From: Botryllus schlosseri
Taxonomy: Eukaryota
NCBI GenBank assembly: GCA_051294905.1
Contig: CM119373.1
Coordinates: forward strand, 34,224,001-34,288,000
Direction of reading: 5' to 3'
DNA length: 64,000 nucleotides
Below, in pieces: positions 7,079 to 58,700 of the stretch. The translations under genes were made by a program, and so were the position numbers. The first letter of the stretch is position 1, and the number at the start of each line of letters is the position of its first letter. The notes under the pieces are model-generated. The model was not told the origin of the DNA. It searched no databases and saw nothing but the letters and a program-made list of their open reading frames with translations.

Positions 7079-8504
7079 CCGACGTGTTATCGAATGTGAT
7101 GAAAATTTTGCTAAAGGAAATTAGATACTCCAGCATAATCACTCATACTCATAATATATGCAAACCATAAATCAATGCAATACAGTACTGCCGCTACATT
7201 GTTCTATATCTCAATTAAGACGCCGTAATGAGCACTTTGTTATCAGCAAGGTTTTTAATATTGCGTGGCACCGTGGAAACCGAAATAGATATTATTTTAA
7301 TGAAAAAGTATTATACAGTGCGTCTATTATATGCCATTACCCATTGATGTGACTTGTCGACGCAAATGCGATCGGCGGTGTAACGATCTCGCCGCCTAAA
7401 ATCATAGTTTGCAACGGATTACGGCGCCAAAAATAACAGCTAGGTACTCTTTGAACCGGATCCCGCACCTCGTCGACCGTACTTTAAATACGACCGTGAT
7501 TGCCCTCTCGGCAGCCTAGGTGTTCTCACAGTTGAGGTGCGTGCGTGTCATCGTGTTATCGCATGCGACTCTTGGGATAGGTACGGCCAGCTGTAGCTGC
7601 AACGGTGCGCGGCTGCACTCAATCAATATTCGTGTGGTGCAGTAGTTTATTGAGGTACTTGAGGTACTACATACTCGATGATCGTTTGGGAGTTTGACAC
7701 AATAACACGGGCTGGGTAATTTTTCAAGCACTGAGCTTATACGAATCTTTCCACGAAGACGAGACAGTATTAACGGCAAATCTTGTTTTGATGTTTCATC
7801 CGAACTTGGTAGCCTTGAAGCCTCGATTGGTCGTATCACAGCATCTGAAACATTTCTGTGAAGTCGTGAACAACTCGCGGCATTGTCAAAAATGAAATGG
7901 ATAAGATCTTCATGTGGTGTACGACTGGTATTATTTTCCTTGTGGTCGCATTAATGTTACATAATATGGACGATCCCCATCATTCATACTCTTTTGACGT
8001 CATACTGTACGTTACTCGACACGACTCAAAGCCAACCTCGATTAGGAATCGCATCACACAGACGATTTTGCCAAACTCAATGTTCTTCTCAATTCTCTAC
8101 TAGTTGCTGACGATTACCCCCCAACTAGCGTCAGCCGAAAATATTCTGGTTTATCTCAGTGTGGATATATCATTCAATTGTATATTGAAGTTCTCTATCT
8201 CCAAGAGTCTCTTCAAACCCTCCTAACAATAACCAACAAAGAATGGAAGTACACTCACATTAATATTGATGTCCCTCGAGACAACGTTGAATATATATCG
8301 TGGGAATGATTGCATGACTTCGCTCTGATATTTTTGTTCAGTGTTCTCAGGATATCTGCGCGACCGTGTTCGGAGTTCGCCAAAGCGGATATCCTGATTT
8401 TCAAGTGGCAACGGTGAATATTTAAATGATTCAATAGAATTGATTTTTCCCGAATCTGAATATGATGGCCGTGCCGATATGAACGGAAATAATGTGGAAG
8501 AGAT

Positions 8505-8750
8505 TCTTGAGGTACAGAACTTAAATATACTATTGAATAATATATTCGCATTGAAATAAACCGGAATATTTTCGGCTGACACTGGCCAGGGTGATCGTTA
8601 GCAACTATAGTACAGATATATAATTGTTGATATGTAATGTTCCTTTAAATTAACTACTCCTTGCTGATGAATTCCCCCTGGCGAGTGTCACCCGAAAATC
8701 ATGGATTACTTCAATACGTATACACTATTCAATTGTATTCGGAAATAATC
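8505..8750. repeat. Family B foldback repeat (two ~115-bp inverted arms) carrying hammerhead-like motif; extra lone arm at 8096-8200
   Basis: Arm consensus TTCTTGGAGGTACAGAACTTCAATATAC..GAAATAAACCCGAATATTTTCGGCTGACACTCGTCAGGGGTAATCGTCAGCAACTAGTAGAGAATTGG, then ~30-35 bp spacer, then the reverse complement. Confidence 0.85.
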
Positions 8751-10466
8751 TTACAGCTGTAGGAAAGAACCTTGAAACAGACGGGAGATTATCACACATT
8801 TACATGCAAACCGATACGGCAGACGATTTAGTCACACAGTCATCAACAGTCTATCAATTTGTCATTTACTGCACCGCGCCACGAAACACGCCCGCTTCCC
8901 ACCTATATTTGCACGCTCGTAAATACTATGACGTGTCGAATCATTTACCGATTAACGGCTTGTTTGTCACAAATGCCGTTTGGCGCGAGATAAATCATTC
9001 ACGTCGACAGTTACGGTGTCAGATGATTAAATAGTGTTCTATTATACTTAAACTAATAACGCCGAATGTTTGAAGGCTGTCAATGGAATGTGTAGTATCA
9101 TACATCTCAAACACGCGTGAGATTTGATGAATTGGGATGCGCGTTAAGAATTCGGTAATCGAATCATGGGCGTAGCCTATCGGCAACTGTTGATGGTTAA
9201 CGATTTTTACTAAACTTTGAAAATTGGAACACGCCCAATCATTACCGAAATATTTGCCCGTCGCGAGTCACGAATTTTCACATCTCTCGCCCCATTCGCG
9301 GAACCGATTCGAATAATTCACGATCGAACGACTCTAATCCGATTCGGACGAAGTGATTCTGTACACATTTCTAGGCATTTTTTCAGCAAAATTTCAAGAC
9401 GAGAGGAGGAAAATACGCACCTTTTTCTGATCACGCTTCACAAACTAAAGAAACAGGCAGATTTGATTATAGTAACGAAGTACTTCTACTTTTTTTTCCG
9501 AGCACTCTCACACGTTATGTTTATTGGCTACTGCCACTTATACTTGATAATTTGTATGTGCAAAATTTTTTTGATTTATACACTTTGGATATTGATAAGT
9601 TTGAAAGTAGTTTTGGCCTTTCCTTGCGTCACATGATTGAGTAGAATTGTCATGACAGCTGGGCAAAAGTGCCCTGCATCAGGGTATGTGGGTATAATAT
9701 CGAAAATTGTAGTGTAGTGTAATTGGTAGGGAAAGTTGTTGTTGCAGTCAAATCCGTGGTAAGTTGCAGTTAAAAGTTGCATGTGTTATTCAGAAAATTT
9801 GCACGAAAAAGTTGCATTTATGGACAGGTTCCTTGAAATTATTAGGTTATGATATACTCGAATCGATCCGTATCCAAGGCAATGTAGCAAAACTATGTGT
9901 TAGCGACTTCAACAAAAATCAATAGCCTGAAAATATTGACCCAGTGGAAAAATAATTTTCGGCGGTCTTATCTGAATATACGTCAAATCAGAAAGGACCT
10001 CCAATTTAAACGACAGTGACATAATCAAGCGATCTATTTGCATTTAGTTAGTTGCTTGAGAAATCGGCAAAAAATCGGTAAAAAAGTTGCAAAAACTGGC
10101 CCTATAGTCATTGGTTATGTTCCGTTAATTTCAAAGGGTATCTGACCAATCTACCAAGTCTCGTTTCTGAATATACTTACTTTCAGGTCATTATTTTCTA
10201 CTTCTACATGAAGTAGTTTTGACATATCTTTGAAAATGGTACATCTGCTTGAGCGGTAACGTTGAATACTTTGACCAACTCTGCGAAGAGGCCAATGCTT
10301 TCATTTATTCGTGAGAATTCATCGCGTTTACTGTAATGGGTAACTATTCGTTACCTCTAACTTTAATTTCGTCGATACCCCGGTACAGTGGCCAGAGAGA
10401 TTGATTTTATCATCAAAGCTTAACGTTTAGGTTACCCGTTAGGCGTGTTAGGGCATATATTTAGTA

Positions 10467-10561
10467 TTCATCCGCTGTTGCAAAAACACTACGGGTTTGT
10501 GCTATCCGTTATGTCTTTTATGGTATATCATCAATTCATCCTCTGTTGCAAAAACACTACG
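10467..10561. repeat. 27-bp direct repeat, 68 bp apart
   Basis: TTCATCC(G/T)CTGTTGCAAAAACACTACG at 10467 and 10535. Confidence 0.85.
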
Positions 10562-12029
10562 CAAGCGAAACAAAGCCATAGTATTCGGTACAGGCAAATC
10601 TCAAGAAACGATCACGGGTGACAGTTTAATCCTCGCCCTTGTTGAAAGCAATGCCCACCATAATAGCGTAGACGGAGGAATCATACCATGTAAACGTCTA
10701 CTCGGCGCCACTGGGATACGCGGTTTAACCTCAATAGACCTTAAATCCAGGTCTTCCAATAGCCTTAATCAAGCTTTAATCCGGCGTTTCACCGCTTCAA
10801 CACGATGCGTGGTCTGTGGCGACTTTCAAAACCGCACGGAGCGATGGAACTTCCAAATTATTACGATAATAGTCACACTGCTGCGAGTCTGGGTTGTGTT
10901 GTTACGCTGTAATGTGCCATTACGCAGTCATAGTGGTTGATTACGTCTCGTAATTACAGACAATAACAATAGCGCGTGGAAGGTATGTCTGGCGGGATCA
11001 TGTTTAAATACAAGCGTTGTGTTTTCATATTATGAAATAATTTGACGCTGCTTTCGTTTACCAAGGTTTTGTTAACAGAGTTGGTTAGATCAAGTCGATA
11101 CGACAGTAACCACTAGTTCCTAGGCTGCAGAACAAGATAGCAAGAATATAGAGTTTCACAAGCAACCGATTAATAATTACGCTGAAATTGACTGCGTGAA
11201 TGAGGTCGAGAAAAGCTCCAAAATATCAATTTCCTGTGACTTGTCATACCATGGATGTAATCGACGTGTGCGCAATGGAATTCGCAGCAGAGGCAAAGAA
11301 AACTTTACGCCTGCCAACATTTCCAACGTGATCGTGCCAAACAGCATTCACGCATGATAAGAGGGAGGTACGGATTTGGAATCTGGTTTCAGAAATCTGA
11401 AAATTTCAGCGTAGGATTGTATTCCTGAAGTTACAACCGACAAAATATATGACACCAATTTATGGTCACTACAGACTAAGATTTGAATATAATATTAAAG
11501 AAGATCTCTATTTAGATTCGAAAATGTCAAATACGTTTCTCTCTATCATAATGATTTGGTGTTATGCAACATGCAATGCCACTATCACAATGATCGATAA
11601 ACGTGACGGATAGAAGTGTATCATCGATTACAAGCGACTTAACCTATACAAAATGAATAGGTTACACTGATATTGCAGATTTATAATAACGAATGGCATC
11701 CCTTTGATACGCTGAAATAGGAAATTAATGACGCACTTGAAGATAAGTTGGCAAATACATCTCTGCGAGAGCAAATACCGGATCTAAATATGCGAACATT
11801 TCAATACGTAACCCGCCCATTATCTCTCTTGCTTACGTCACAGAGCTAATACAGTTTGTCCATCCCAGGTAACGGAACGCATCGCAGGGCTATAGTGTGC
11901 GAGACATGATCAAGGGTTCGGTTACAAGTTAAATCTCCATTACATCCGGGCTTCCACTCCTTCATGACTGCAGTCATTATATATAAATTTAGGAGTCGAG
12001 GTTACCTTATTCTTAAAGTGCAGAGCTTT

Positions 12030-12290
12030 TTGGAGTTACGGAACTTCAAAATACAATTGAATAGTATATTCAGTGTGAAATGAGCCCGAATATATTTGGC
12101 TGAGACACGTCAGGGGTATAATCGTCAGCAACTAGTAGAGAATTGGAATGAAGATTGTATATCAACAATCGTATCACAAGATATACTAGTAGCTGGTGAT
12201 TGCCCCTGACGAGTGTCAGTCGAATAAATTCGGGTTCATTTCAATATGAATATACTATTCAATTGTTTACTTATAGTGAGTTGAAAATTT
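12030..12290. repeat. Family B foldback repeat
   Basis: Forward arm 12030-12150, reverse arm 12183-12280. Confidence 0.85.
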
Positions 12291-12688
12291 TCACGATCGG
12301 GCTTTAATATTTTGGATTTGGAATCAATTTGTTGTATTGTGCTATTTTTTACTGTCCTTTTGACTCTCTGCCCGCAAATCACCGCTAAATTGAATTTGCA
12401 ATGGCCGAATGACCATATACCTTATTTCATTCATTTAATTTTACTTATTGCACGTGGTGCTGTGTTTTTTCTCTCTCTGCCACCGTATGTCTGTAGTTTA
12501 CCTACAGTTTTTAGTGTAACTACTTCTGTTGTAAAATGACTGGACTGTGGCTCGGCCCGCCTGTACCTTGCTTATCATATTACGTTTCGCTCAATTACCT
12601 TTGGTAATGTATGTTATTGATTTGCAAATAAATTGGCAAATAAACATGGTGAAGATTCTACACCAAATGTGTATGCTAGTGGCAGTGG

Positions 12689-13277
12689 CAGGGTTGTAAT
12701 GACTCGAGTCATGACTCGACTAGAGTCCGACTCGAGTCACGATTTTCTGATGACTCGACTTGACTCGAGTCATTTTCGCAAAATTCAGAAATGACTCGAC
12801 TCGACTCGAGTCAATTTGTGTATTGACTCGACTTGGACTCGAGTCATTGTGCATGACTCGAACCAAGTCATATGGCTCGAGACTCAGACTTCGAAGACCG
12901 GCGATTCATTGTAATTTCGAAGAATAGTAAAGTTGCCACGCTATTGGGATCTCGACTATTGGTACTGGTACTTGAAAATGCGACCAGGAACTGCTAAAAG
13001 TGTGGAAAATTAGTATATTATAAATGCGAACCATTAGATATCATCAAACGGAGTTATAAAAGGTGGGTTTAACAAGACATTGACAGGAATCCGAGCAGTC
13101 AACACAATGACTTGGACTCGACTCGAGTCATAATACCGTGACTCGGACTCGAGCCTATTTTCGCTGACTTGGACTCGGACTTGACTCGGTGGTGAATTGA
13201 AAATGACTCGACTTGACTCGAGTCAAAACTATAAAACTGAGATTGACTCGGTGCCTTGTGACTTGGTTACAACCCTG
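12689..13277. mobile_element. hAT-superfamily MITE with GACTC/GAGTC subterminal arrays
   Basis: Perfect 11-bp TIR CAGGGTTGTAA/TTACAACCCTG; perfect 8-bp TSD GGCAGTGG at 12681-12688 and 13278-13285. Confidence 0.95.
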
Positions 13278-14269
13278 GGCAGTGGTAAATTAAACCCACA
13301 ATTACAATTTCCGACAGTGATGTCATGGTACAAACAACTTACGCTTCATCGAACACATTTATCCCGGTTTTATGTACTCCGTAGTCATCCAAGCCGTCAA
13401 AGGCAATCTAAGTCCTCTTTAAGGCAATATGCTTTAAAACCCATAGAATTCATATGAAATTCCACGGTGTCCTGTCAAGTGTATCAAAGCAATAATCACA
13501 CCCTACTTGCGGTCCATCTGTCAAAATTATACCGGATTCGCTTAGATCCGAGTCGATGAAGCAAGGAACTGTGTGAGATGTTCTTGGTGGAGCGTGAGGC
13601 GTGGTTAATACAGCAACTGAAGCTTGCATAAACCATGCCGAATTCAAATTGAGCTCTGGCATCACCGTTGATACCGAACGACAAGACAAAAATATGGCAT
13701 GTGGTGTATCCATGTATGGGTAAATTTATCGGTAACTAACTATTCTTCACCATGGAATAGCAGATCGATACGATGATTAGTCAGTAACAATCTTCCAAAT
13801 GAAGTGGCGTTAGCGCTGCACTATAAGCCAATTTTGGATAAAAGATGTGGACTAAATTCGGTACACTTATGTTTGCTCAAGAACTAATTGTTGTGTGTTA
13901 TATTTTGGTGGATAAAAACTGTTTAGTTAGCAGCGACATTTCGGTACCACATCGTCAAGATACCGAGAACCCCCTAATATTGCAATATTTGATCAGGAAA
14001 TGAAATCGCTCTCAGTATAGTTTTTAGTATTTTACATCGATGGGAGCTGGCATGTGGTGCAAATACGCCTGTTTATCGAGAATCGATAAAACGTATTTCC
14101 AAACTCATGACGCAATATTTCCATGACAAAAAAACATTTATCGCGAGGGATTGTGTGATCAAACAAATGTCTGTTAGAGGTACTATTACATCACTTCGGT
14201 TGATCTGCCTTGTAGTGTTTTCGTAATCTAGGCGTCTTCCGATCATTTTAAATTTAATTGATCAGTATC

Positions 14270-14530
14270 AGGGCCAGTTTAGTAAACATTTTATCATTCC
14301 ATAACACTACATGACTTCGATACCATGTTACATATAGGAAGGTATCGAAACGACTTGGAATAGTCTTTGAAATCGGACACCCACCTTGGCTTCGGCGATG
14401 CAGATAGGAGGCATACACACGGGAGGGAAGTAGAACAGCTAACAACTATTCTGATGAATATGAATGCATGATGCATGTGAGATATGTCAGATTGCGGTCC
14501 GGTAATCTGGAGGGTTGAATAGTATTCAAT
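14270..14530 (-). mobile_element. LINE 3' UTR fragment (further copies: 26880-27030 +, 46385-46530 -, 55870-55940 -)
   Basis: Shared ACTGCGATACAATGAAAAGATAGGAAGGTGTCGAAACGA..GACACCCACCTTGGC and GGTCCGGTAATC motifs. Confidence 0.8.
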
Positions 14531-17500
14531 GCTCTTTCCAATTCTAGTAGTTACTGACGATTACACGCGAAAATATTCCGGTCTATTTCAATATGAATAC
14601 ATTTTTCAATTGTACCTCCGAGAGTCTTTTACATTTAACTATATTATCAGTACTACAAAAAACGAGATAAGTTGTGGCGGATACCGCAGACACCGCGATG
14701 CTTTTAAAGGAACTCCTTGAAATACCAACGCAGTGACTCAATCAACGGCAAAGCTATCAATTGGTTTACACGAAAACAAACCTGTACCCACGACCCACCC
14801 ACTTACCTCACAGACATCTGCGTCTCGCTATTACATTTAGTAGTCATTAAAACTAGTTTGGAAAGTAAGCCATCATTGGCAAAACCATGAAACCCAAATC
14901 CCCGCGAAGAAATCGGTCGTGCGCGTCAGGAAAACTACGTGAGGATCTTACGTCACGATTTGTTTGATACGATACGCGGGCGGTGACCCTTGCTACGACC
15001 CGGTCGAGCAGTCAGCGTAACTAAAACAGTCTTTCATCAGCGGTATGAGACAGCCGTACGATGTGTATACTTTTACGAGGTCAAACTATGGTGGTTCTAA
15101 TTTTAGATTCGCGAAGATACAGCTAGAGATATACGCAAACTCTGGGGGCAACTCAGGAAAAGTGATTGAATGAGAAAATAGACATCGGTAGGTGGCCAGT
15201 AAGTCATTCAACATTGCTAGTCAAGTAGAAGTAGATGCAACGACTCAAATTTCAGCCTACATATAGCGATTTCCAATTGGTTAAACAAGTATTCAATGCC
15301 TAGTTTTTGTCCAAAATAATTCCCAATATATATCAAAACTACTTCAAGTGGAGGTCGAAGATGAAAGATCTGAAAAGTGCTCAAGTAAATAGTTTCGAAA
15401 TCTATAGAAATGGTCGAGGGGCCGCATAATTTTCGATGTTAATCTGAGAAGGCTACTTGTTAGATTTAAGTACGAATGACACTACGAATAGGTACAGTAT
15501 TCGAGAACATGTTCGGTTACTATGATACGGAGGTCATCTAACGCGCGGTTTGTATGGCATTTTCGCTCACAAAAGTGATACAAACTCATCGCTTAAGTTC
15601 TTTGTACCCAAATCTTAAAAAGTAAGTTATTTTTCCAAAAGAACTGCCAGATAGAAATGGAAGTTATCAAAATGATATCCACGTGTGTAAGTATAGGAAG
15701 TATAAAGTTATAACCGACTTGATTAGTCCCAAACAGCAGGCGTAATTCGTTACTGACCATGATCAGTTTGATCACCTATGCTAGAAAGCCAATACGGCAT
15801 GAGTTACGACGGTGTGACTATAATACTGTCGTGTGAAACCGGTAGCATAAAGTGAGGTTTTAACATTCCACATTTATCGCACACACAGGAACCATTTAGG
15901 TAATATTTAGTTAACACATCATTTAAGTTACTGGTATCCATCATACATCACAACGCGTACCAAAACAGTCGCCAAGCAGCTGTTTCTGGCATACATCCTG
16001 AAACGGGGCAGCTTTAAAGAGCCAGTTCTTTCCCCTCATAATCTCAATAGCGCTCTCACATAAGGCGTGTAAGCAAAGGTCGCCTTTTTGTTTGTGACCA
16101 AAACTCGATTGGTGTCGCGAGTGGCGATACGGGTTGCCACGCAGATAAAGTATCTTGGCCCAATGTTATGAGTAAGAGTGATAGCGGGCTAGATAAAGTC
16201 GTGAGAAAGTTCGCGATTCATTCAGTGCTATTGAAGTGTCGGCTTATGGCTGGTTAGTGGTTACGCATACTTGATGCGTACCACTGGTTTACGGTATTAC
16301 AGTCAGCACTTCGGCTGTCCTTTTAGTGATGCATAGCTAAAGAGCTTCTTGGAGGTACAGAACTTCAATATACATTTGAATAACATATTCATATTGAATA
16401 TATAATTCAATTGATTCATAGCTATGATATACCATATTGGACTATGAAGAAGAGTAAACAAGGAGCTAGTGGTCGCGATCACTTTTCAGATGGCGCAAAA
16501 TCTATTTGAGAATTACAAAAAAGCAAAAGTACTTCGTTATTGAACACCTCTGATGGTTAACCACGCCATGTGGCGATATCATGGATAAGAATGGACGTAT
16601 ATATAGACGGCATATCATTAACACCTGCTGTTTGTTAGACGAAGCATATACATAATGCATAATGCAAAATCCTGCCAGAATCGACCCGTTTGATTTGGCG
16701 GTAATGAAGTCACATGCTCTGCACGATGTAGTAACTCACGCATACTGATGCATACAAAGGTTTTATTCAGATTCACGCGAGCTTCCTCCAATCACATAGT
16801 TTCAAAAGACACATTCACATCGGACCACACTACGTTATAGGGCGTTATAGATTTTTACACGCTTTAAAGGTGTGGTATGTAATGACAGGATGTAAGAAGG
16901 TTGTGGAAGGTTATTTAGGCGTCATGGATACGAACACGAATAAATATACGGTACATGATCTTAAGGTCTAAACATAGCCCTTCAACCAAGTCGTCTTTAT
17001 TAGGTTCAAAGGCCACGGTCTGAAAAAGGATACTGTGCCCATCTCCTTGAACTATGTGAATTATTTTTACTCACAACACCAAGTGAAAAGGCAAGCGTAA
17101 TTCTATATATGTACTTCATGCTGGAGAAATACAGACCTTTCATTATAGTGAAATTGACACCGCGGTAAAGTAACATGTTTCTAAAACGCTGTCGCAAACA
17201 AATTACGAAGTTCAAATAAGTTTAGATATTGTGTTAGACAAGTTTTGTCAAAACATGCTCCGTCTTAATTTAATGTTCGGATGAACGATCTACCTACGCG
17301 CGACCAGTCTGGTTTGAGATCAATCTTCGGTACTAATATTTATACGGAGAAGCATGTAATAGGTTTTTAACAGCAAGCAAGTACAATATCAATGAAGATC
17401 GTGTATTTCACCGATTTCCGCCATTGCTTGGTGTGCAAATCAAATCAACTGACACTATTCACGGGGAAATCGATTTTCACCCTATCGTAGGTCAGGTAAA

Positions 17501-19403: not shown

Positions 19404-19836
19404 TGGGTCACCACTCACCATACGTCCTCTTTTAAGAGGATTTGTCCTCTTTTTTGACTTTTTGAAAGTGTCCTCGGAGGACGCCCAAATGTCCTATTTT
19501 TAGAAATTTTGTGCGCTTTTTTGAGAGATTGGTATAAATATAGGGTAAAATTGGATCGAGATACAGTAAATCAGCACTTAAGTAACGCTCCGGCGTCAAT
19601 TTCGGAAGCGGGGCCGGAAAGATGACTTTGTTTAGTCAACCAACGGATAATGTGAAAGAAAAACTGTATTTCGGTAGTTGAGCCGAGAAGTGGACCTTTT
19701 TTTCTTTATTTTATTTAGTCAACCGGCCACGAAGTCGGAAAAATTTACCAAATTTTCAGGATTTTTCTATTGTCTGACAAGTCTGACAATTTTTAAAAGT
19801 GTCCTCTTTTCAGATCTCCAAACTATGTTAACCCTA
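19404..19836. mobile_element. hAT-superfamily MITE (family D, copy 2)
   Basis: Shares CCATACGTCCTCTTTTAAGAGGATTTGTCCTCT and the right end with 3904-4249; left TIR disturbed. Confidence 0.85.
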
Positions 19837-20929
19837 GACAGCACCTACTTTAGTACGTTTAGAATACTGCGGAGGCACAAATCCCATGACACTCAACAAT
19901 CAACTTTTTAATTTGAATATTATGACGCTCGGCAAGCAGTCTAGTTAAGAATCCAGTCAATTCACAAACTCCTAATCCTTTGAAAGACAACAGACTCGCC
20001 CCGCCTACTACATAATTCAGCACGCTCACATGGGCTCTATTGGATTCAACATCGCCGTTTCTAAGCAACATACAGTCACTCGGAAACAAGAAGACCAATT
20101 TGAAGATAAGTTATCTCGGTAAATTATATGGCAAGGTACAACGAGCGCGGTTAATCGACACAAATAGCGTGAATCGTTAATGAAAATCGAGAATTTAACG
20201 GCGGGAGTTTACGCCGGCGCATTTCCTTGTCTTAAAAACTTTTGGCTGCGCTTGCCGCTTGGATTCTGTGAACCGCATATGCGATATTGATATATTTATT
20301 TACTGCGCAAACTGACAGTTTATTGCTAACTGTGCGGGGATTAACGTTTGCCATTTTTGAATCGATAAGCTCCTCAAACATTACACAACCAGTGATGTAT
20401 CGGGATACGATATCCTAATTTGGCACGGCCACTCTGTAATATCACCGCCATCACGAAACGTACATTGGATGTATAGTTGCTGAAAAAACACGCGCTATCA
20501 CACAAACGGTTTTTATGACGCCACGTGTAGTGGGCATACGGTCAATAAACCCTTACATCATATTTGTGCGGGCACGTATACGAATTGGTACACTATCGTG
20601 GTATGATAGGGATGCAAATAACAGGACCTCGAGCTCCGCTGACCTATTCCGCGGCGCGGATGCAGATATCATATCACGACATCGCGAGACATAGACATAC
20701 ATCACGACTTGATGTATATCTACACAAGGACCGCGTGAGTCACGTACCGATTGCAGTTCATGTGTAAGGTATAATGTCGCTTTGTGCAAGCAGCACAGTA
20801 ATTCAATGAAGCCGGATTTGGTCAATGTAGTCATCGTTAGCACCCAAGTTATAAGTGGTAGTAACACATTCAATTTTGCTCACGTGCAAGTATAAGTAGC
20901 GATTTCGCTATATGTATTCTACACCTTGT

Positions 20930-21010
20930 TTCTTGGAGGCACAGAACTTCCCGAATATTTTCGGCTGACACTCGTCAGGTGTAATTGTCAACAACTAGTA
21001 TAGAATTGGC
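20930..21010 (-). ncRNA. Candidate minimal type-I hammerhead ribozyme in a family B arm (best-preserved core)
   Basis: Minus strand 20982->20948 reads ACAC-CUGACGA-GUGUCAGCC-GAAAAUAUUC-GGGA. All core nucleotides present; helix I has mismatches versus the family consensus ACCC/GGGU. Activity untested. Confidence 0.55.
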
Positions 21011-22359
21011 AAAAACAATGCATATCAATAACTTTGAGTGCTTCGAAAAAGTTGACTTAGTCGTTTATGACCACCTCTGAATCTGGGCAAAGGGGGAATT
21101 CAACCCATTTTCATTGTAGGCTACGAATGTATTGTGTATTTCAGAACGAAGAAAGTTCTGATGTCGGTCGCTGACTATCGTCACGATTAATGACGCTTCA
21201 CAACCAGAATACACTTCCATACGACATGCGACTGTGTATTTTCGTCTCAAGCATGATGAAATGACCGATCGAAATTCAATTTTATTCGTCAAAAACGCAC
21301 TTGTACAATGTACATCTTCTGATGCACCGCCGTATATAGCCAACCCATATATTAACATAGTATGACAATGATAACATTTGCCGCTGTCATACCGACGCGG
21401 ACACGCTGTTACAGGAAATATCATGAAACACCCGCTGTAAGACTGTAAGATGCGAAGAGGTGGTCAGTAACGAAACCAGAACGTACCTCAGACTTACACC
21501 ACGGCATAAATCGAACACAACATTTTTATCCAAATGATGCTTGCATGTAGGATTTATAACCGCAATATAATTCTGATTTGGGTTATGTTCCGTGTACACG
21601 GTGTACACTCTTTTCGCCAAAAGCCATTTTTGCACTACTGCACCATCGATGGGCGAACCGATATGACCGGGGTGTGACTTCGTCAAGTCCGTCGTGAATG
21701 CCGTTGTCAGTGAAGCGCGCGAAATCGACCTAGTAACAAGTCACGAGCGTTACCGCGCAAAAGGATTGTGCCTTCGTTAAATATTGCCTCACGACAGACA
21801 TGCCTGGCGGCCTCCGCCAAACATTAAACCGTATTTGACAAACAGAAACATTGACACAAGAGGTGAAGTCATCGCTTTGCATAACGACCGGCCGGCGGTG
21901 CGTCGAGAAACGGTTGCCATCTCTTAAGACTGAGTACATATTAACTCCTCCGTGCCACAGCGAGAAAGTTAATTACGGATTAACTCTTCCGCGGTAAAAA
22001 CAAGTGGCAGTCTGGGAAAACCGCGTAAAACCGCCTAATTTTGCGATTACGGCTAGTAATTAGTGCGGTGCCGCGACATAACAATATAATCAAATCAAGA
22101 TCAAGGGACAGCAACAAACCACCGGTGACTGCGCGTTGTAATGGACATTAAGGGAAGCTAGACGAATGGGGCCGCACACAAAATTAAACATGACGTAATT
22201 CCACCATGCAGAAGGTGTAAGTTGATGTCGTGTTCTTGATATTTACTAATCGTAACGCTTACAAGAGATGGCTCAATTTTTCACCCAATAATGACTGACT
22301 AATTCATTCACAGTAATCATTGGCAAAATTCATATCGCATAGCGTGATAGCATAGAGCT

Positions 22360-27272: not shown

Positions 27273-27319
27273 GTTATCATATCCGAGTGTATTTACATTC
27301 AATTCCGGTTATTAGCGTC

Positions 27320-27790
27320 GAATCCGAATCTAGAACGCATTGATTCCAGCACTATTCGTTCGACGGTATAAGCGAATTAAATATGTCTATATTTGGCAAA
27401 AATTTCAAGTCCGTGCGTCCATTTTGAAGATGCGCCCATAAAAAATTATTGGATCACATTTGCGGTAGCTATTTCGGGTTTAGGCTTCGAATCCACATTT
27501 TGAACGCATTGATTTCGTCGTTATTAGTTCGATGGTGTGCGTGAATTGAATATACATTTGCCAAACATTTCAAGTCCGTGCATGCATTTTAAGGATGCGC
27601 CCATTAAAAAGATTATTGGATCACATTTGCGGTAGCAATCTCGAGTTTCGGCTTCGAATCCAAATTTTGAACGCATTGATTTCGTCGTTATTAGTTCGAT
27701 GGTATGCGTGAATTGAATATACATTTGACAATTTTTCTATTTCGGGCATACACAATAGATACGGGCCCATCAAAAATTATCGAGACAAAT
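27320..27790. repeat. ~168-bp tandem repeat, ~2.7 units
   Basis: GAACGCATTGATT recurs at 27333, 27502 and 27669; units 2 and 3 nearly identical. Confidence 0.92.
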
Positions 27791-30700: not shown

Positions 30701-31379
30701 AAATAAGCAACCGCATATACCACATATGAGAGACGGCGGACACATGTCGAGAGTTAGGTCAGACTTGGGAATAACTTCCACGACGAATGACGACAGATTG
30801 TCAATGTTTCCCTGTTCTCCAATTAGCAAAATGTCTGATTTAAATTCCTGATTTTTGCAGTTAGTTATTCCACCCTGCTGTTCTATATTAGTTAGGGTTA
30901 TCATATTTTGAGATCCGTGAAAGAAGACACTTTTTACAACTGATGTTGACAGACATTTAAACGGGAGGTTTTCATAGAAAATGGTGATCATGCCTGTGAA
31001 TTGAAAACAATGCTGAATCCGATGAATCCAATGCTGAATTGCGTTGGGTTGGCCGATTTTTTGTAAATTGTATAGAAAGCTAGTTTAACGTTTCTATTCA
31101 GTCGATATTACCATTTTTAGTCGTCTCTGTGTCTTCGCCTAACACACAGGGTATAGTGAAAGTGACATTTGGGCGTCCTCTGGCGACATTTCGGTTTTCT
31201 TGAAAAGAGAGATCTAATCATCTTAAAAGAGAACATGCAGTGTCCCTAATATTACTCCACGATTAGACCCAGCCTATTTTATGCAAGGCTCGACAAGACT
31301 TTGGCATGACTTTGGTAACTGTTACGTTTCAAGTTGGGTACGGTGTGAATATATGCCGTATAACGCAGGGATATATAAT

Positions 31380-50149: not shown

Positions 50150-51050
50150 TAATATCTTTCAATCCAGCACCCATCTTTTCGCAGGATATGTATATAAGAG
50201 GCACGTGCACTGAATTAAAAGTAACGCAAGATATCATAAAATGAAGAAAAAAAACGATGAAAACGAATTGGTATGTGTCGGACACTGTCGGTAGTAGAAA
50301 TAGATATGTCGGATCTTGGTCCGGTAATCTCGAGCAGGCTAGTATTCATTCTGTAGAATCTTCTTGTATTTTGAATTGAGTGCGAGCATGCTCCTCAACT
50401 GTCTGATTGTACGCGAAATACTCTTCCACGGTCGCGGTCGGTCGTAATGGACCATAGTTGAAACGAATATGGATTGCTACGGATTGTTCCCTGAGCAGCT
50501 GTAGAATTACTCGTGTCTTGTCTCGAACAGATATAGATAGATCTTCATCAGTCCTTTATAAAAACGTTTATCTTTTCACCAACACCACAAGATTGCGATA
50601 TAATGAAAAGATACGAGGGTGCCGAATACGACATGAGTAGACTTCTAATCAGACACCCACCTTGGCCTTAGAGCAGTGGTTCTTGATCGGGGTTCACGTG
50701 AACCTCGGTGTTCGCTGAGCCAGTCTCTGTGGTTCGTTAGAGGTCAAGAAACATACCAGATTTACAGTAAATATTCATGATAATCTTCTGTTTTGCTTGA
50801 AAATCATGTTTTAATAATTTTGCTGTTATTGATGTACAGTTCATTTTGTTTCCTGGTATTCTACACTATAATATGTGTAATGTTTTAGATTTTTTTCGTG
50901 ACTAGGCGAGAATTTGGTGTTCGCTAACGCTTTTGGAACAGAGTAAGGGTTCACTACGTTAGTAAGTGACAGACACACTGAATGAAAAGTACTATAAGAT
51001 ATAAGAGGACAGTACACGGGCAACAGTAATTTGTGAAACGGCAATCTCAA
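50150..51050 (-). mobile_element. Two tandem LINE 3' ends (50150-50460; 50560-51050, the latter split by the hAT fragment)
   Basis: Both carry the family 3' UTR motifs; CACACTGAATGAAAAGT resumes after the hAT insert at ~50975. Confidence 0.7.
50674..50965. mobile_element. hAT (Charlie-like) MITE fragment inserted in a LINE 3' end
   Basis: Left end CAGTGGTTCT..GGGGTTCACGTGAACC..GAGGTCAA; related fragment at ~36820-36890. Right end degraded; no TSD found. Confidence 0.6.
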
Positions 51051-54000: not shown

Positions 54001-54249
54001 GGCAGATCTTAGTCATTCTCTAATATTGGCGGAGAATTCCAAGCGGGGTAGTCTGGGACCTTATCCCGATTCACACAGAGAATGGATGAAAACAATAGCT
54101 TTCGCAGGGTCTTTTGCGCTACAGCTGGTGTTGCTAGCACCGGGTGCAGTTTATGAATAATTTCATCATTTGCATACGCCGCAACATGGCGAGAAAATGA
54201 ATGGATAGGAAAAAGTCGCACGACTTGGAATATTCTTTCAATGCACACT

Positions 54250-54450
54250 GTACAGTGGAATAATATTTTCAATTATTCATATTATTTAAATAAACCTAAA
54301 TTCTGTCGGCTGACACTCGTCAGGGGCAATCGTCAGCAACTAGTCGAGAATTGGATTCAACTAAAGAACAATTCTCTACTCATTACAGGCGATTACCCCT
54401 AACGAGTGTAAACCGAAAATGTTAGTGTTATTTCAATATGAACATATCGT
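54250..54450. repeat. Family B foldback repeat ~1 kb upstream of the IER ATG
   Basis: Forward arm to 54355, reverse arm 54380-54445. Confidence 0.8.
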
Positions 54451-54779
54451 GGTCTCGTAGCTCCAAGAGTTGCTCCAACTAACCTTTCAATCAAACACCC
54501 ACCTCTTCGTCTGGTGTCCAGACTGTTTTAAAAGGCCGATAGTCATGTACCTTATCTTTATGCGACCCGGATTTAAACAAAAAAGCTGTAAACACGCCAG
54601 CAGACTGTTGAGTCTATTTAGAGCGCAGTGTTTATCAACAGTGCGAATTCCCAATTCGCAGAACAGCGGCACGGATCAGTAAAGGGTTAAGTCACTTAAG
54701 CAGCCGCGATATATTAAATGTCATCTTAGTCGATAACACTCAAACAGCGAAATGTATACAGCGTCCAGCGGCCTTTATC

Positions 54780-55250
54780 TTTACAATATCCAGATAAGTC
54801 CCCTAGAAAGATAACAATGCCCTATCCGCCGTGGCGTGGCGTGGGACGATCGATCTATACGCGGAATTTAAAATAAGGAGAGAGAGCCGCCAAGTGCTAA
54901 CAAAAGCCTGGCGTTTTCCTTCCGGCCAGTTCGAGAGAGGCGGGGAGCTGAAAAAGAAAAAAGAAACGAGACAGTCTATAATTGGCGAGGAATAAAACTA
55001 CGTAATCCGTTTCCCGCAAGCATGCAGTTTGATAAGGCCGCGACACCGGCAGGATGTGCGGTACGCTGGCCATTGTATTGCAGTTTTCTTTGCTTGTGAA
55101 ATATTGCAATCTTAGTTGTAGTCGCGGATATAACGTGTAAATGAGTTTGCATATAATATTGCACGGAAAATGTCAAATAGCTGATAATAGTCTGGACGTA
55201 TTTTAATAACGAAGAATTCGTGGATTGCGACCAGAACAATTTCGTCGGTG
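54780..55250 (+). promoter_or_regulatory. Candidate proximal promoter of IER-family gene
   Basis: CpG-rich stretch upstream of the ATG with (CGTGG)x3 at 54830-54844, GC-box GAGGCGGG at 54937-54944, TTCCTTCCGG ETS-like site at ~54916-54925, E2F-like TTTCCCGC at 55010-55017. TSS not determinable from sequence. Confidence 0.5.
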
Positions 55251-55433
55251 CCTCGGCGAAGTCACGAAATTTCTCCGGTCTCGACGCTTAGAATCAAGCG
55301 AGGGCGTGGTTTAGTTACTGTAGTATTCAGCAAGTGTTCATATCCTATTATCTTTATCAGGTATATACTAAATACCCAACCTACTACTGAAACAGGGATT
55401 CGGATAACCCCGAGGAATATATTTTCAATCAAG

Positions 55434-55734
55434 ATGGTGATAAACATGGACGTTGAACTTCAAAGACTGATATGCGTGTCAGTGGAAAAGATGACACGAG
55501 AACCCGTGCCTTCGCGAAAAGGGAACGGCCTGGATTTACGCAAGGCGTTGCTGGTAGCGCACGTATTGCAAGACATGCGGACTGCGTACATCGCCGACGA
55601 TTATAAGGTTTTGGTTAACACTGTCTGCCCGAATATGAACGGCGAAGAAATTGAAAGGGCCATACTCAGGCAGGAATATAACGAATCGTTAACGGGCGAC
55701 GTATTGAATCACAAAAGAGCAAAATTCTTATCAG
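55434..55734 (+). CDS. IER5-like: IER-family (immediate early response) gene, coding exon 1: N-terminal IER domain
   Basis: ATG in strong context (aagATGG at 55434; second in-frame aacATGG at 55446). Translation MVINMDVELQRLICVSVEKMTREPVPSRKGNGLDLRKALLVAHVLQDMRTAY resembles, from memory, the IER2/IER5/IER5L N-terminus pattern (..Q.L...S..KM..SR..RGG..L.K.LLV..VL...R..Y). Ends at donor cag|GTAAAT, phase 1. Paralog cannot be assigned. Confidence 0.88.
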
Positions 55735-58700
55735 GTAAATACTCCTTACTGTTCGACTTCCGAGGTCGGATTTGTCTTGCGCTTTTTGTCGCGCTCGGTC
55801 GCGCTTATTTTCGGCGGGATTGTTTCAAAATACCGACACCGTGATTCGATGATGTTTGAATGTCTGGCTCAGTTCAGTAACAATCTTATTAATAATTTCA
55901 TCTATTCAAACCACCAACACACTGCGATACAATGATAAAATTGAACTCGAAGCTGCAATTTATTTACGCTGCAGTATGCCACAGCCTCAGTGTTCAGTAA
56001 TAGCTTTGCATTCGCTCGTATCGCGAAAAAGACGTTGCCAATGATACATTCATATTGAAATAAATCCGGATATTGTCGGCTGATACTCGTCAGCAACAAC
56101 TATTAAAGAATTGAAAGGAACATTGTAAATCAGGAATGCATTGATGTGTGCTTAGGTTTCAGAAATCCCCGCGATTTCATGTCACGGAGGTGTGTGTTTA
56201 CTTCAAAATTAGGTGGTGGAAAGATCTTGTCACGACGCATTAAACATAATGATCCGCACACGATACATTTCAGAATTTAATTAAAAAATGACTGGAATTT
56301 TATATCATTTGTCGCTTTGAGAGAATAAATAGCAGATATGTCAAACCTAAAAATAGCTATACTGAGTATTTCCGCGCTGGGTCTGCTGCTATACATATGC
56401 ATATTATATAGCGCTTGATACGAGGAAGTGTACTATATGGCGTGGTAGTCACATGTCGCATAGTGCAACGCGGAAATTCGTTACCCGGCGAGGCACTCGT
56501 GACTGTTTGTTTTGCCGCGGTATAGCGTCAGCGCACTCGAAAAGGAAGCACATCGTGTGAATAGATCCTGTTCTGGCGGCCAGCGCGGCACTTCTGGGCG
56601 GGTTCGTGTTGTGACGGAACCAGACGCTTGTTTGCAAACAGTGGGGCGATAACGGAATGTTGAAAAACGCGGGAAAACGTTGTCCGGACGCGTGTGCCGC
56701 GAATTTTCGCACCAAACTAGGGGAATACTGTTGAGAAGTAACGGCACTCTGTCAAAATCACACGTGTATGCAAGACATTCATTCGATCAGTACTCTACAC
56801 ATCTATACTGGAAATACTAGGGAGTAGAATAGGCGTATTTACCATATCCCCACTGTAGCATATGGTGTAGCACTTTCAGGCGCCATATTATGCTTTCAGC
56901 TGTGGTCGCACTTTGAAAAGCAGGGCGTGGCAATCTTGAATTGGCGACGCCGGTTAAATTAGTCATAAACGCAAAATAAGTGACGTCACTTGCGATTCCA
57001 TTTGGCGCGTATACGCAACCGATCCTGCAGCTTGTACATTGTATTGTATAGTGTACAACGCGCACATTCCGTGCATTGAATGAACAGGAGGTAGTTTCGA
57101 CGCTAGAAACACTAACCTAATCTGATTCAATGCAGGTCCGTAACTGGAAAGTGCCTTATCACCAAAGGCTATGGCGATTAGTCAGTAGATAATTGGACTA
57201 TCTACGAAACCTGCAGTCACGGGGCGTACCAAAATCCCAAGTCTTCCACAATGCTGTAATGATGACAACTATCTTGCGTTCATCACTAGAGCGTTTCAAC
57301 CGCGGGGATTATTCTAGCTAGAACATAGTCGCTGGGCCCCCGAGATTATTGGGCCTCGATTGCGCCGAGACAGCTTGGATATTCTCGGCTGTGTTAGCGT
57401 CTAATATCCAAATTGGAAATCTCATTACTGTATTCCGAGAAAGCACTATTTGCTAAGTACACCAGAGCGAAACGCCTGGTTAATACGCGTATCAGACTGA
57501 TAGTCGACGGTCGGTGTTACGCTGTATCGTACTACATCGAAATGCTTGATCCCCGTGTTATTCTGCCGTTACTTGTTGGGCTATTGGTCATTTTCAATAG
57601 GCGGGTCGTACCGCTGTGACCCGTTATCGATTCCTTAAGCTATCAGAATCGATTGACTTCCAAATTCGGGCGGTTATTTTCGAATTTCGCACAGCAATCG
57701 AGAGATATCTTTTCCTGTGCGTAAGTTCATCGTTTGAAGGCCGGCCTCAATCAAATGTCAAAAGCGCGGCAATTGGTAATGATGAATTGGTTATTATAAC
57801 TGATAACACAGTCAAATTCATGTATCGCTCTTAATAATCCAGCTGTATCTGTGTTTTAAATAGCTCGATGTTCATTTCAATTATCTACTAGTTGCTGACG
57901 ATTACCCTTGACGAATGTCAGCCGAAAATATTCGGGTTTATTTCTCTATAAGTTTGTTATTAGATTGTATATAGGTCTGTACCTTAGTGTATATGCTGAT
58001 GACTGTGGGCTGTGGCAGGTTATAAACCAGCAGAATGCTACGCAGTACTGCCAAAACCGAAAATGTTCGTTACGCGCAAAAGTAGTATCGATATTTTTGT
58101 TTATAAATAATAGACTCTCTCGTATACGAATAGAATACTAGGTAATTGCGACTGTCCTCGAAATAGCACCGTCGATTCCGAGAAGGCGCAAATTATCGAC
58201 ATCACTAAATTTGCATCAATCTCGGCCGCGGAAAGACGTAATGGCGTGGTGGCCGGTGGTCCTTTTTCGGTATAATTCAATTTTCCGCAAAAATCAACCC
58301 GAGATTTGAGGTAATTCGGAAAATTTTGGACGATTCGGAATAATGGCACCTTGAAAACGAGAGTCGATTGCTTTTGATTGACCACAGGCCGCGAATAACA
58401 GTGGAGCGATTCAAAATCGGGTAATTAAGCGCGCGGATGTCTTGTTTGTCTTATCCGAAACATATTGCCCGTGTGTTTAATAACGTCAACCGGGCACCTT
58501 GATAAGATACCGCCCGAACTAATTGCGCTGTAACTCGGGCAATTCTCATCGGATAAACTCGGGGTTAGGTGGATATCAATCGCGCTATCTTTGGATGTTC
58601 AATCTGATGGATCGTTTTCAAAACAAATAGCAGGGCCCCGGATTATGATTAACCCTATCGATAATGCTGCCGGCATTTTCTCCACGTTTTAATTAACATC

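What the first reader, a model, noticed from the sequence alone, without database searches (positions are those of the whole stretch)
8096..57945. Dispersed foldback repeat whose consensus is a complete minimal hammerhead ribozyme
Seen in sequence: 11 arm copies (8120+, 8560-, 8678+, 12090-, 12206+, 14554+, 20950-, 54300-, 54390+, 56070-, 57905+) give the majority consensus 5'-UUACCC CUGACGA G UGUCAGC C GAA AAUAUU C^GGGU-3'. CUGACGA is intact at the expected position in the copies at 12206, 20972, 54317 and ~56087. GAAAAUAUUC is intact at 8137, 8564, 14569, 20953 and 57924. Established knowledge: the hammerhead core is C3-U-G-A-N-G-A9, G10.1-C11.1, G12-A-A-A15.1...U16.1-H17, with helix I flanking. 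Minimal type-I hammerheads of newt satellite 2 and Penelope-like elements have GAA followed by a 6-nt palindrome and C, and work as dimers. AAUAUU is such a palindrome, and ACCC/GGGU closes helix I in the correct register. Inference: family B is a Penelope/retrozyme-related, ribozyme-bearing non-autonomous element rather than an ordinary MITE.
Basis: partly seen in the sequence, partly recalled or inferred. Interest (0 to 1): 0.9.

Follow-up and report, generated by a model that had tools for sequence, protein, structure and literature searches.

The report
Penelope retroelement relics carrying hammerhead motif
A very abundant repeat in this animal genome is the cut-off tail end of a Penelope-type jumping gene whose ancestral sequence holds a small self-cutting 'hammerhead' RNA motif with an odd second helix; every copy in this window is a mutated relic, and the Penelope-hammerhead link itself is already known.

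Summary
All 11 arms plus one extra fragment exist, at 76-94% identity to a roughly 150-nt consensus.

The window consensus, and the genome-wide majority read from contigs and RNA reads, is ACCC-CUGACGA-G-UGUCAGC-C-GAAA-AUAU-UC^GGGU.

The repeat is not a MITE:
- Its 3' ends are fixed at two sites about 30 nt apart, matching the optional "tail" reported as peculiar to Penelope-like elements (PLEs).
- Its 5' ends vary.
- Four of nine loci are back-to-back inverted pairs, with the tail at one end only.
- Those four are flanked by 8-12 bp target duplications that do not border inverted termini.
- Genome-wide flanks are AT-rich.

This is the PLE insertion signature, and the motif sits on the element's sense strand, 37 or 67 nt from the 3' end.

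Caveats:
- Helix II as a hairpin is one base pair. The motif is complete only if loop II pairs with the upstream box GCUGAC, which is unproven here.
- No Rfam hammerhead model matches.
- Predicted folds prefer three inactive hairpins.
- No RNA ends pile up at the cut site.
- All window copies carry disabling changes and drift neutrally.
- No RT/GIY-YIG ORF lies in the window.

This scan has already flagged the same motif at many other places in this genome.

The parts
8062..8214 (+). Copy A: single arm with tail. The hammerhead region at 8100-8157 carries 3 core changes.
   Evidence: consensus positions 44-193. No TSD detected (p=0.33).
8494..8739 (.). Unit B: a back-to-back inverted pair. Arm 8497-8616(-) has the tail. 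Arm 8623-8738(+) ends at the tail-less site. The 10/10 TSD CGGAAATAAT lies at 8484-8493 and 8740-8749.
   Evidence: (p=0.0005).
12021..12269 (.). Unit C: an inverted pair. Arm 12022-12185(-) has the tail and reaches furthest 5' (consensus position 31). Arm 12184-12269(+) is tail-less. TSD CTTAAAGTG / CTTATAGTG at 12012-12020 and 12270-12278.
   Evidence: (p=0.10 alone, but at the same element boundaries as B).
14523..14632 (+). Copy D: single arm. A deletion fuses the box heptamer to GAAA and removes the real core and loop II.
16340..16412 (-). Unit E: the 3'-most 63 nt with tail, plus a roughly 10-15 nt inverted stub. The 11/12 TSD GAT(G/T)CATAGCTA lies at 16328-16339 and 16413-16424. There is no hammerhead part.
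   Evidence: (p=0.01).
20925..21031 (-). Copy F: the only copy with all core nucleotides intact (20951-20998). Helix I has 2 of 4 pairs. An internal deletion joins GGG directly to the tail.
   Evidence: (0 mismatches). No Rfam hammerhead hit on 20930-21030 at E<=10.
54243..54483 (.). Unit G: an inverted pair. Arm 54250-54353(-) is tail-less. Arm 54369-54477(+) has the tail. TSD CTTTCAAT at 54235-54242 and 54484-54491, possibly 14-15 bp.
   Evidence: (p=0.0035).
56040..56132 (-). Copy H: single arm. One of the two CUGACGA repeats and the spacer between them are deleted. It ends near the tail-less site.
57868..57984 (+). Copy I: single arm. C3>U and G10.1>A. The tail is partly kept.

Best explanation
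Family B consists of dead, strongly 5'-truncated 3' ends (62-163 nt) of a very high-copy Penelope-like retroelement.

Insertion (structure shown, mechanism inferred):
- Each insertion was made by target-primed reverse transcription starting at one of two internal start sites about 30 nt apart. This gives copies with or without the 'tail'.
- In four of nine loci the reaction ran from both cut DNA strands, so two cDNAs of the same 3' end were joined head to head.
- That is why the repeat looks like a foldback.

The motif (shown as sequence, activity inferred):
- The ancestral sequence carries, on its sense strand 37 nt (tail-less) or 67 nt (tailed) before the 3' end, a Penelope-type minimal type I hammerhead motif.
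- Its parts are helix I ACCC/GGGU, the core CUGACGA, a G10.1-C11.1 pair closing the loop UGUCAGC, GAA, A15.1-U16.1 closing a palindromic AUAU loop, and the cut after C17.
- Inference: in master copies the 7-nt loop II pairs with the box GCUGAC, which lies 4 nt upstream of helix I. This would build a 7-bp quasi-continuous helix II and tie it to helix I.
- Inference: cleavage needs a second copy (dimer through AAUAUU) and/or the element's protein, as published for other PLE hammerheads.

In this window the motif does nothing. Every copy has a core change, a deletion or a broken helix I.
For: Observation and consensus.

Genome-wide majority and abundance:
- The majority keeps CUGACGAG-UGUCAGCC-GAAAAUAUUC-GGG (loose ends at places 12119 and 8120).
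- Summed contig depth reaches 2.06e6 against about 93 for single-copy sequence, and 29,601 contig pieces were laid.

Ends of the copies:
- 3' ends cluster at consensus positions about 163 and 191-193.
- 5' ends scatter over positions 31-132.
- Genome-wide at place 12264-12266, 589 contigs go on with the tail, and 256 go on with unrelated AT-rich sequence.

Inverted units:
- In B, C, E and G both outer ends are 3' ends, and the tail is at one end only.
- Their TSDs have p=0.0005, 0.10, 0.01 and 0.0035 against random placements.

Flanks beyond the head and the tail are AT-rich with low agreement.

Published PLE traits that match:
- An inverted 5'-truncated copy at the 5' end, and a 30-40 bp tail at one end (PMC8557442).
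- The tail equals the stretch between two internal RT start sites, both DNA strands are cut and extended, targets are AT-rich, and the ribozyme is protein-assisted (PMC11167929).
- min-HHRs with helix I of 4-5 bp and a minimal palindromic helix III, found as pairs on opposite strands 100-700 bp apart (PMC4209133).

The box/loop II duplex is -8.1 kcal/mol, against -4.7 for the rival core/loop pairing. Pseudoknots that tie stems I and II are common in hammerheads (PMC3088659).

A relaxed descriptor is met by chance about 4e-5 times per consensus with helix I, and about 5e-6 with the box (first-match counting, so low by a small factor).
Against: - No RT or GIY-YIG ORF was found among the 78 stop-to-stop ORFs of 85 aa or more in the window, so the link to a Penelope protein is by insertion signature only.
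- No Rfam hammerhead model matches.
- The hairpin helix II is 1 bp.
- The predicted MFE of the consensus is three hairpins (-12.2 kcal/mol) that bury the core and the cut site. The hammerhead fold without the pseudoknot is +5.2, and the AAUAUU dimer helix is about -0.2 kcal/mol.
- There is no covariation. Window copies fit the pseudoknot and the rival CUGAC/GUCAG hairpin equally well.
- Core positions are no better kept than flanks (85% vs 86%, p=0.88).
- No pile-up of RNA ends at UUC^GGG in one bulk RNA-seq run (table 6). The library type would hardly show one.
- Five single arms have no detectable TSD.
Confidence: 0.62

Rival explanations
1. The Penelope-type origin holds, but the hammerhead-like stretch is no longer, or never was, a working ribozyme in this family. 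With helix II cut to one base pair, it would be a degenerate descendant of a PLE hammerhead. Alternatively it is two small hairpins (CUGAC-GAGU-GUCAG and CCGAA-AAUA-UUCGG) that serve RT binding or nothing at all.
For: - The MFE is exactly these hairpins, and the hammerhead fold is about 9 kcal/mol or more worse.
- No Rfam match.
- No RNA ends at the cut site.
- Some very successful PLE clades lack hammerheads altogether (PMC8557442).
- HHR mutants do not affect PLE insertion in vitro (PMC11167929).
Against: - All 13 core and closing nucleotides, the helix I register and the palindromic loop III are kept in the majority sequence of a family with thousands of copies.
- A 6-7 nt complement to loop II sits at a distance from helix I that is geometrically sensible.
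- Published PLE min-HHRs also fold poorly and cleave weakly without help (PMC4209133, PMC11167929).
Confidence: 0.28
2. An ordinary foldback/MITE-type DNA transposon with long terminal inverted repeats, in which the hammerhead-like words are a by-product of internal palindromes.
For: - Arms occur as inverted repeats.
- TSDs of 9-10 bp would suit MULE or foldback-type elements.
- CUGAC/GUCAG and CCGAA/UUCGG are palindromic arms.
Against: - The ends marked by the TSDs are not inverted copies of each other. One is the tailed end and the other lies 30 nt short of it.
- The inversion junctions differ between units (positions 31/79, 47/75, 71/71, about 132).
- Single arms share the 3' ends and differ at the 5' end.
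- There is no transposase ORF in the window.
- The interiors between facing arms are single-copy host DNA (depth about 93).
Confidence: 0.04
3. A SINE-like element, or a LINE 3' end, moved by a non-Penelope reverse transcriptase. The inverted pairs would come from twin priming, and the hammerhead resemblance would be chance.
For: Variable 5' truncation, TSDs of variable length and AT-rich targets are common to all target-primed retroelements.
Against: - Twin priming inverts an upstream segment. It does not duplicate the same 3' end on both sides.
- There is no poly(A) or microsatellite tail.
- Two 3' ends 30 nt apart are described as unique to PLEs (PMC11167929).
- The motif lies on the sense strand, where PLEs carry their hammerhead.
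- The chance rate of the motif is about 1e-5 to 1e-4 per family.
Confidence: 0.06

Closest known systems
Minimal hammerheads (min-HHRs) of Penelope-like elements (Cervera & de la Pena 2014, PMC4209133)
   Same: Type I order of blocks, a full core, a short helix I (4 bp here, 4-5 published) and a helix III reduced to a palindromic stretch. They occur massively as single truncated copies, and as pairs on opposite strands 100-700 bp apart. They lie near the element's 3' end/pLTR.
   Different: Published min-HHRs have a long hairpin helix II of 7-8 bp. Here the hairpin is one G-C pair with a 7-nt loop, and a helix of that length arises only if the loop pairs with an upstream box.
Poseidon/Penelope insertion mechanism (Frangieh et al. 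2024, PMC11167929; Craig et al. 2021, PMC8557442)
   Same: An optional 30-40 bp tail between two RT start sites, extension from both cut strands giving inverted 5'-truncated partners, AT-rich targets, and a hammerhead some tens of nt upstream of the start sites.
   Different: No ORF is attached to any copy in this window. All pieces are 165 nt or shorter. Mechanism was not tested here.
Newt/axolotl satellite-2 hammerheads and metazoan non-LTR retrozymes (PMC7229834; bioRxiv 10.64898/2026.07.22.740005)
   Same: Helix III is a single A-U pair closing a palindromic tetraloop, so dimer-dependent cleavage is expected. Retrozymes are proposed to be PLE-derived.
   Different: Retrozymes are head-to-tail arrays of 170-400 bp with a 4-bp helix II and loop-loop contacts, and they yield circRNAs. 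Family B shows no tandem array in the window, and no circRNA evidence was obtained.
Pseudoknot-stabilised hammerheads (Perreault et al. 2011, PMC3088659; crystal structure PMC11300833)
   Same: Loop II base-pairs with sequence attached to stem I and holds stems I and II parallel.
   Different: In those ribozymes stem II is a normal stem and the pseudoknot is an added tertiary contact. Here the pseudoknot would have to supply almost all of stem II.
Non-circularly permuted hammerheads, type SGC/CSG (PMC10085705)
   Same: One side of stem I would be joined to one side of stem II by a 3-4 nt linker, with pseudoknotted core topology.
   Different: Those are whole-block permutations found in metatranscriptomes. 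Here the block order is the classic type I, and only the 5' strand of stem II is displaced.
MITEs / foldback DNA transposons
   Same: Short, AT-rich, dispersed, with inverted arms and TSDs.
   Different: The true ends are not inverted repeats. There are two alternative 3' ends and variable 5' ends. Tested here and not met.

Membership tests
Hammerhead ribozyme (type I, minimal PLE/newt kind) | Core C3-U-G-A-N-G-A9, G12-A-A14, A15.1-U16.1, H17, in type I order | tested here: met
   Met in the window consensus, in the genome-wide majority and in one copy at 20951-20998(-). The other 10 arms each carry 1-3 core changes or a deletion.
Hammerhead ribozyme (type I, minimal PLE/newt kind) | Helix I closing the motif in register (4-5 bp in PLE min-HHRs) | tested here: met
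   ACCC/GGGU in the consensus. 79% of cells pair across 9 copies, with no covariation.
Hammerhead ribozyme (type I, minimal PLE/newt kind) | Hairpin helix II (7-8 bp in PLE min-HHRs, 4 bp in canonical metazoan ones) | tested here: not met
   Only G10.1-C11.1 closes the 7-nt loop UGUCAGC.
Hammerhead ribozyme (type I, minimal PLE/newt kind) | Substitute helix II by pairing of loop II with the upstream box GCUGAC | tested here: inconclusive
   6-7 complementary nt in the consensus, with a duplex of -8.1 kcal/mol. 87% of cells pair, but this is no more than shuffles give and equals the rival hairpin.
Hammerhead ribozyme (type I, minimal PLE/newt kind) | Helix III: one A-U pair with a palindromic loop | tested here: met
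   A-AUAU-U in the consensus. The dimer helix is about -0.2 kcal/mol.
Hammerhead ribozyme (type I, minimal PLE/newt kind) | Match to a curated hammerhead covariance model | tested here: not met
   No Rfam hammerhead family at gathering score, at E<=10 on 13 kb, or at E<=10 on the 101 nt of the best copy.
Hammerhead ribozyme (type I, minimal PLE/newt kind) | Self-cleavage at H17, and RNA ends there in vivo | tested here: inconclusive
   No place where RNA reads begin or end in excess (table 6). Depth was 60-300 in a standard cDNA library. Cleavage in vitro is not testable with these tools.
Penelope-like element | Optional 30-40 bp tail: two alternative 3' ends | tested here: met
   Ends lie at consensus positions about 163 and 191-193. 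Genome-wide, 589 tailed and 256 non-tailed continuations were seen at place 12264-12266.
Penelope-like element | Inverted 5'-truncated copy joined to the 5' end, tail at one end only | tested here: met
   Units B, C, E and G.
Penelope-like element | Variable 5' truncation and TSDs of variable length at AT-rich targets | tested here: met
   5' ends lie at positions 31-132. TSDs are 10, 9, 8-12 and 8-15 bp in four units. Five single arms have none detectable. Flank consensuses are AT-rich.
Penelope-like element | ORF with telomerase-like RT and GIY-YIG endonuclease | tested here: inconclusive
   None among the 78 ORFs of 85 aa or more in the window. All copies end before any ORF. The 5' continuation seen in other copies is open in one frame up to a stop, which is weak. 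Notes from other windows claim the link, but it was not checked here.
Metazoan non-LTR retrozyme | Head-to-tail arrays of 170-400 bp units, each with a hammerhead; circRNA products | tested here: not met
   No tandem array of family B. Arms are single or inverted.
TIR DNA transposon / MITE | Identical inverted termini directly inside a TSD of fixed length | tested here: not met
   The ends inside the TSDs are different parts of the arm, tailed versus 30 nt shorter. There is no transposase ORF.

The most novel reading that the evidence does not exclude
The Penelope elements of this genome use a hammerhead in which stem II is not a hairpin. One G-C pair is kept, and the rest of the helix is built by the 7-nt loop pairing with a box 4 nt upstream of helix I, which ties helices I and II covalently. 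The box repeats the core heptamer CUGACGA exactly. The same loop can therefore pair either with the core (off) or with the box (on), which would make a built-in switch. As far as the papers read here show, such a split-stem-II type I hammerhead has not been described.
Probability: 0.4. Interest if true: 0.65.

Novelty: new variant of a known kind. Interest (0 to 1): 0.42.

Why it matters
It matters in three ways.
- Annotation: this looks like a foldback MITE but is a retroelement product, so repeat annotation of this genome should file it under Penelope-like elements.
- Mechanism: it gives a clean natural example of the two-start-site 'tail' and of double-ended insertion, which so far have been documented biochemically for one lizard element.
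- Ribozyme structure: if the loop II/box pairing is real, a family with thousands of copies offers a natural hammerhead whose stem II is supplied in trans-like fashion by the 5' flank. That would widen the search descriptors, since neither Rfam models nor hairpin-based descriptors find it. It would also bear on how PLE hammerheads are kept off or on.

The copies in this window have no likely function.

Tried and rejected
- Rfam at gathering score and at E<=10, also on the best copy alone: no hammerhead.
- Window scan for any CUGANGA...GAAA: only 2 hits, no more than shuffles give, so the window holds no second hammerhead family to give covariation.
- Covariation counts on 9 copies for the hammerhead-plus-pseudoknot structure and for the rival hairpin: no signal either way.
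- Core versus flank conservation: no difference.
- Pfam on all 78 stop-to-stop ORFs of 85 aa or more: only a weak IER hit, no TE protein.
- Exact-pattern scans of public collections for more copies: viral contigs gave none. Metagenome contigs gave none for the 29-mer. The 20-mer gave 5 hits, all in GC-rich bacterial-looking coding sequence, which I judged to be chance.
- Search for the 5' continuation of the family in the window: absent.
- Attempt to name the organism or get orthologous loci: the 244-aa ORF is not on record, and the Atlas gave no usable hit.
- The idea that arm pairs 3.5 kb apart in direct orientation (8636/12181, 54369/57864) frame a Penelope ORF was rejected. The interiors are single-copy and hold no RT ORF.
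- Lunse et al. 2017 (PMC5785218) could not be read.

Full report
**1. What is there**

A MAFFT alignment gives a consensus of about 147 nt, and the copies are 76-94% identical to it. GAAAATATTC occurs 6 times where 0.3 is expected. The combined pattern with up to 3 mismatches is found 9 times, against 1.0 +/- 1.0 in shuffles.

The window has 41% G+C and no N.

**2. The family genome-wide**

I laid two DNA contig sets, one raw RNA-seq run and one RNA contig set of the same organism on window 8000-12400 at 80% likeness.

- Abundance: the arms collect summed contig depths of 1.6e5 to 2.1e6, against about 93 for the single-copy sequence between them. 29,601 contig pieces from one run were laid. 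The family therefore has thousands of copies or more; the tool warns that this depth is not a copy number.
- Majority sequence: where window copies depart from the family, the loose ends give the majority. At place 12119 this is the reverse complement of CCCCTGACGAGTGTCAGCCGAAAATATTCG (282 and 227 contigs, 127 RNA reads). At place 8120 it is TGACGAGTGTCAGCCGAAAATATTCGGGTT.

The consensus keeps both.

**3. It is not a MITE**

I oriented all arms so that the hammerhead-like strand reads 5'->3' and aligned them to a consensus extended by the 5' continuation (see section 4).

- The 5' ends fall at consensus positions 31, 44, 47, 48, 52, 55, 61, 71, 71, 75, 79 and 132.
- The 3' ends fall at only two places: about 163 (after CAATTGTAT) and 191-193 (after ...CCAAGAGCTCTTC).
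- Genome-wide the same dimorphism shows at place 12264-12266. There, 589 contigs go on with the 30-nt extension and 256 go on with unrelated AT-rich sequence.

Four of the nine loci are back-to-back inverted pairs: B 8494-8739, C 12021-12269, E 16340-16412 and G 54243-54483.

- In each, both outer ends are 3' ends, and the 30-nt extension is present at one end only.
- The junction between the two arms lies at different consensus positions: 75/47, 31/79, about 132, and 71/71.
- Each unit is bracketed by a direct repeat: CGGAAATAAT 10/10; CTTAAAGTG/CTTATAGTG; GAT(G/T)CATAGCTA 11/12; and CTTTCAAT, perhaps 14-15 bp.
- Against 2000 random placements of the same geometry, p = 0.0005, 0.10, 0.01 and 0.0035.
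- The sequences just inside these repeats are not inverted copies of each other, so there are no terminal inverted repeats in the transposase sense.

Other observations:
- The five single arms show no detectable TSD.
- Flanks beyond the head and beyond the tail are AT-rich with low agreement genome-wide.
- The interiors between facing arms are single-copy host DNA.
- No transposase, RT or GIY-YIG domain is found in any of the 78 ORFs of 85 aa or more.
- There are no head-to-tail arrays of the family.

**4. Which mobile element**

The combination of traits is the published signature of Penelope-like elements.

- Craig et al. [quoted passage not shown]
- Frangieh et al. [quoted passage not shown] The enzyme cleaves and extends both DNA strands at AT-rich sites.
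- Cervera & de la Pena 2014 (PMC4209133): PLE min-HHRs occur mostly as single truncated elements, and as pairs on opposite strands 100-700 bp apart.

Twin priming of LINEs would invert an upstream segment. It would not duplicate the same 3' end.

I therefore read the 'foldback' as two cDNAs of the same 3' end, primed from both cut strands and joined in the middle. The structure is shown; the mechanism is inferred from the literature.

Other genomic copies, including RNA reads, continue 5' of the family head (place 12184). That continuation is absent from the window. In one frame it is open up to a stop 8 nt before the head, which is only weak evidence for an ORF end. So the window pieces may be plain 5'-truncated ends of a longer element. 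A separate non-autonomous family is not shown.

**5. The hammerhead-like motif**

On the element's sense strand, 37 nt before the tail-less end and 67 nt before the tailed end, the consensus reads GCUGAC-GAUU-ACCC-CUGACGA-G-UGUCAGC-C-GAA-A-AUAU-U-C^GGGU.

- What fits: core order, helix I register (4 bp) and helix III (one A-U pair closing a palindromic tetraloop, as in newt/axolotl and PLE hammerheads; PMC7229834, PMC4209133).
- What does not fit: helix II as a hairpin is a single G-C pair. This fails a defining feature of published min-HHRs (7-8 bp). It probably explains why no Rfam hammerhead model matches, even at E<=10 on 101 nt of the only intact copy.
- Possible rescue: the 7-nt loop is complementary over 6-7 nt to the box GCUGAC(G), which lies 4 nt upstream of helix I. 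The duplex is -8.1 kcal/mol. The loop strand runs on directly into C11.1, so the box would take the place of the 5' strand of a 7-bp helix II, and its 3' end would lead through GAUU into helix I. This is sterically like a fully paired hairpin loop. It is my inference and was not modelled.
- Precedent: pseudoknots that tie stems I and II are common in hammerheads (about 40%; PMC3088659), and one has been solved (PMC11300833). A stem I-stem II linker of about 3 nt occurs in permuted forms (PMC10085705). In those, however, stem II is a real stem.

**6. Evidence against activity**

- The box repeats the core heptamer CUGACGA, so the same loop can pair with the core itself (5 bp, -4.7 kcal/mol).
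- The predicted MFE of the consensus is three hairpins at -12.2 kcal/mol, which bury the core and the cut site. The hammerhead fold without the pseudoknot scores +5.2, and the AAUAUU dimer helix about -0.2.
- Published PLE hammerheads behave similarly: they cleave weakly even as dimers, and in one case only with the element's protein.
- Among the 9 alignable window copies, the proposed pairs are kept no better than in shuffles, and no better than the rival hairpin.
- Core positions are as mutated as flanks (16/108 vs 57/405, p=0.88). Eight of nine copies have core changes, two more have deletions that start or end in the two CUGACGA repeats, and the one intact core has a broken helix I.
- This is what neutrally decaying retro-copies should look like, so it says nothing about the master copy.
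- RNA reads cover the arms equally on both strands, and nearly all run on into unrelated sequence. No excess of read ends is seen at the cut site. Frangieh et al. report the same absence for an active element.

**7. Chance**

A relaxed descriptor required CUGANGA, a closing pair, GAAA, 2-6 nt, UH, and a 4-bp helix I. In random sequence of the arm's composition it occurs about 4e-5 times per 147-nt consensus on both strands. With a 6-nt complement to the loop within 25 nt upstream, the rate is about 5e-6. The script counts only the first match per start, so these figures are low by a small factor. By inspection the consensus passes in the register ATAT.

That alone would not survive a scan of very many repeat families. 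But the motif also sits on the right strand, at the place where PLEs carry their hammerhead, in an element with the PLE insertion signature. I therefore take homology with PLE hammerheads as likely (about 0.8) and present-day or ancestral activity through the pseudoknot as open (about 0.4-0.5).

**8. Earlier notes of this scan**

Look-ups show that the same motif, including the GCUGAC box, has been noted many times elsewhere in this genome. Two follow-ups filed it as a Penelope hammerhead whose second helix is made with an upstream box, and other notes place it directly after a GIY-YIG ORF.

These notes changed my reading. Before them I put 80% on a chance resemblance in a MITE. I could test only the parts visible from this window: the box complementarity, the genome-wide consensus and the PLE insertion signature. 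The ORF link was not tested here.

**9. Verdict**

- It is overstated on 'complete' and unsupported on 'retrozyme' and 'non-autonomous'.
- The association of PLEs with minimal hammerheads is known.
- The one-base-pair stem II with a box pairing is the only part that may be new. This window adds no test of it beyond consensus complementarity.

Noticed in passing
window 9617-10057: Another very high-copy repeat, unrelated to family B. Summed contig depth is about 1.3e5 against about 93 for single-copy sequence, and the window copy differs from the family majority at many places.
   Followed up: no
window 27318-27731: A tandem array of 2.5 units of 167 bp at 85% match.
   Followed up: no
window 3889-4016, 19417-19521, with inverted partners at 30893-30939 and 31164-31248: A second dispersed inverted-repeat family. 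Its 37-nt stretches at 3911-3947 and 19417-19453 are 100% identical, while the rest of the family is 62-85% alike.
   Followed up: no
window 12700-12880: A nest of GACTCGAGTC-type palindromes and a 33-bp tandem repeat. It gives weak, sub-threshold microRNA-precursor hits (mir-1422, 29.5 bits against a gathering score of 60).
   Followed up: no
window 55248-55844 (+): An ORF with a weak match to the IER (immediate early response) domain, E=0.003, below Pfam's cut-off. Family-B copies G, H and I lie within 2 kb on either side of it.
   Followed up: partly
window 56057-56113 (-) and 14534-14589 (+): Two family-B copies carry deletions whose ends lie in the two direct CUGACGA repeats (box and core), as expected from slippage between them.
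   Followed up: partly
window 12154-12185 (-) and its continuation in other genomic copies: Other copies and RNA reads continue 5' of the family head. The continuation is open in one frame (...DYSKFHAGDVYIL, then a stop 8 nt before the head), so it may be the C-terminus of the parent element's ORF.
   Followed up: partly
L001-L005 (metagenome contigs): The 20-mer CTGANGAGTGTCAGCCGAAA occurs in five GC-rich soil-metagenome contigs, within what looks like one conserved bacterial coding region. I judged this a chance match unrelated to the family.
   Followed up: partly
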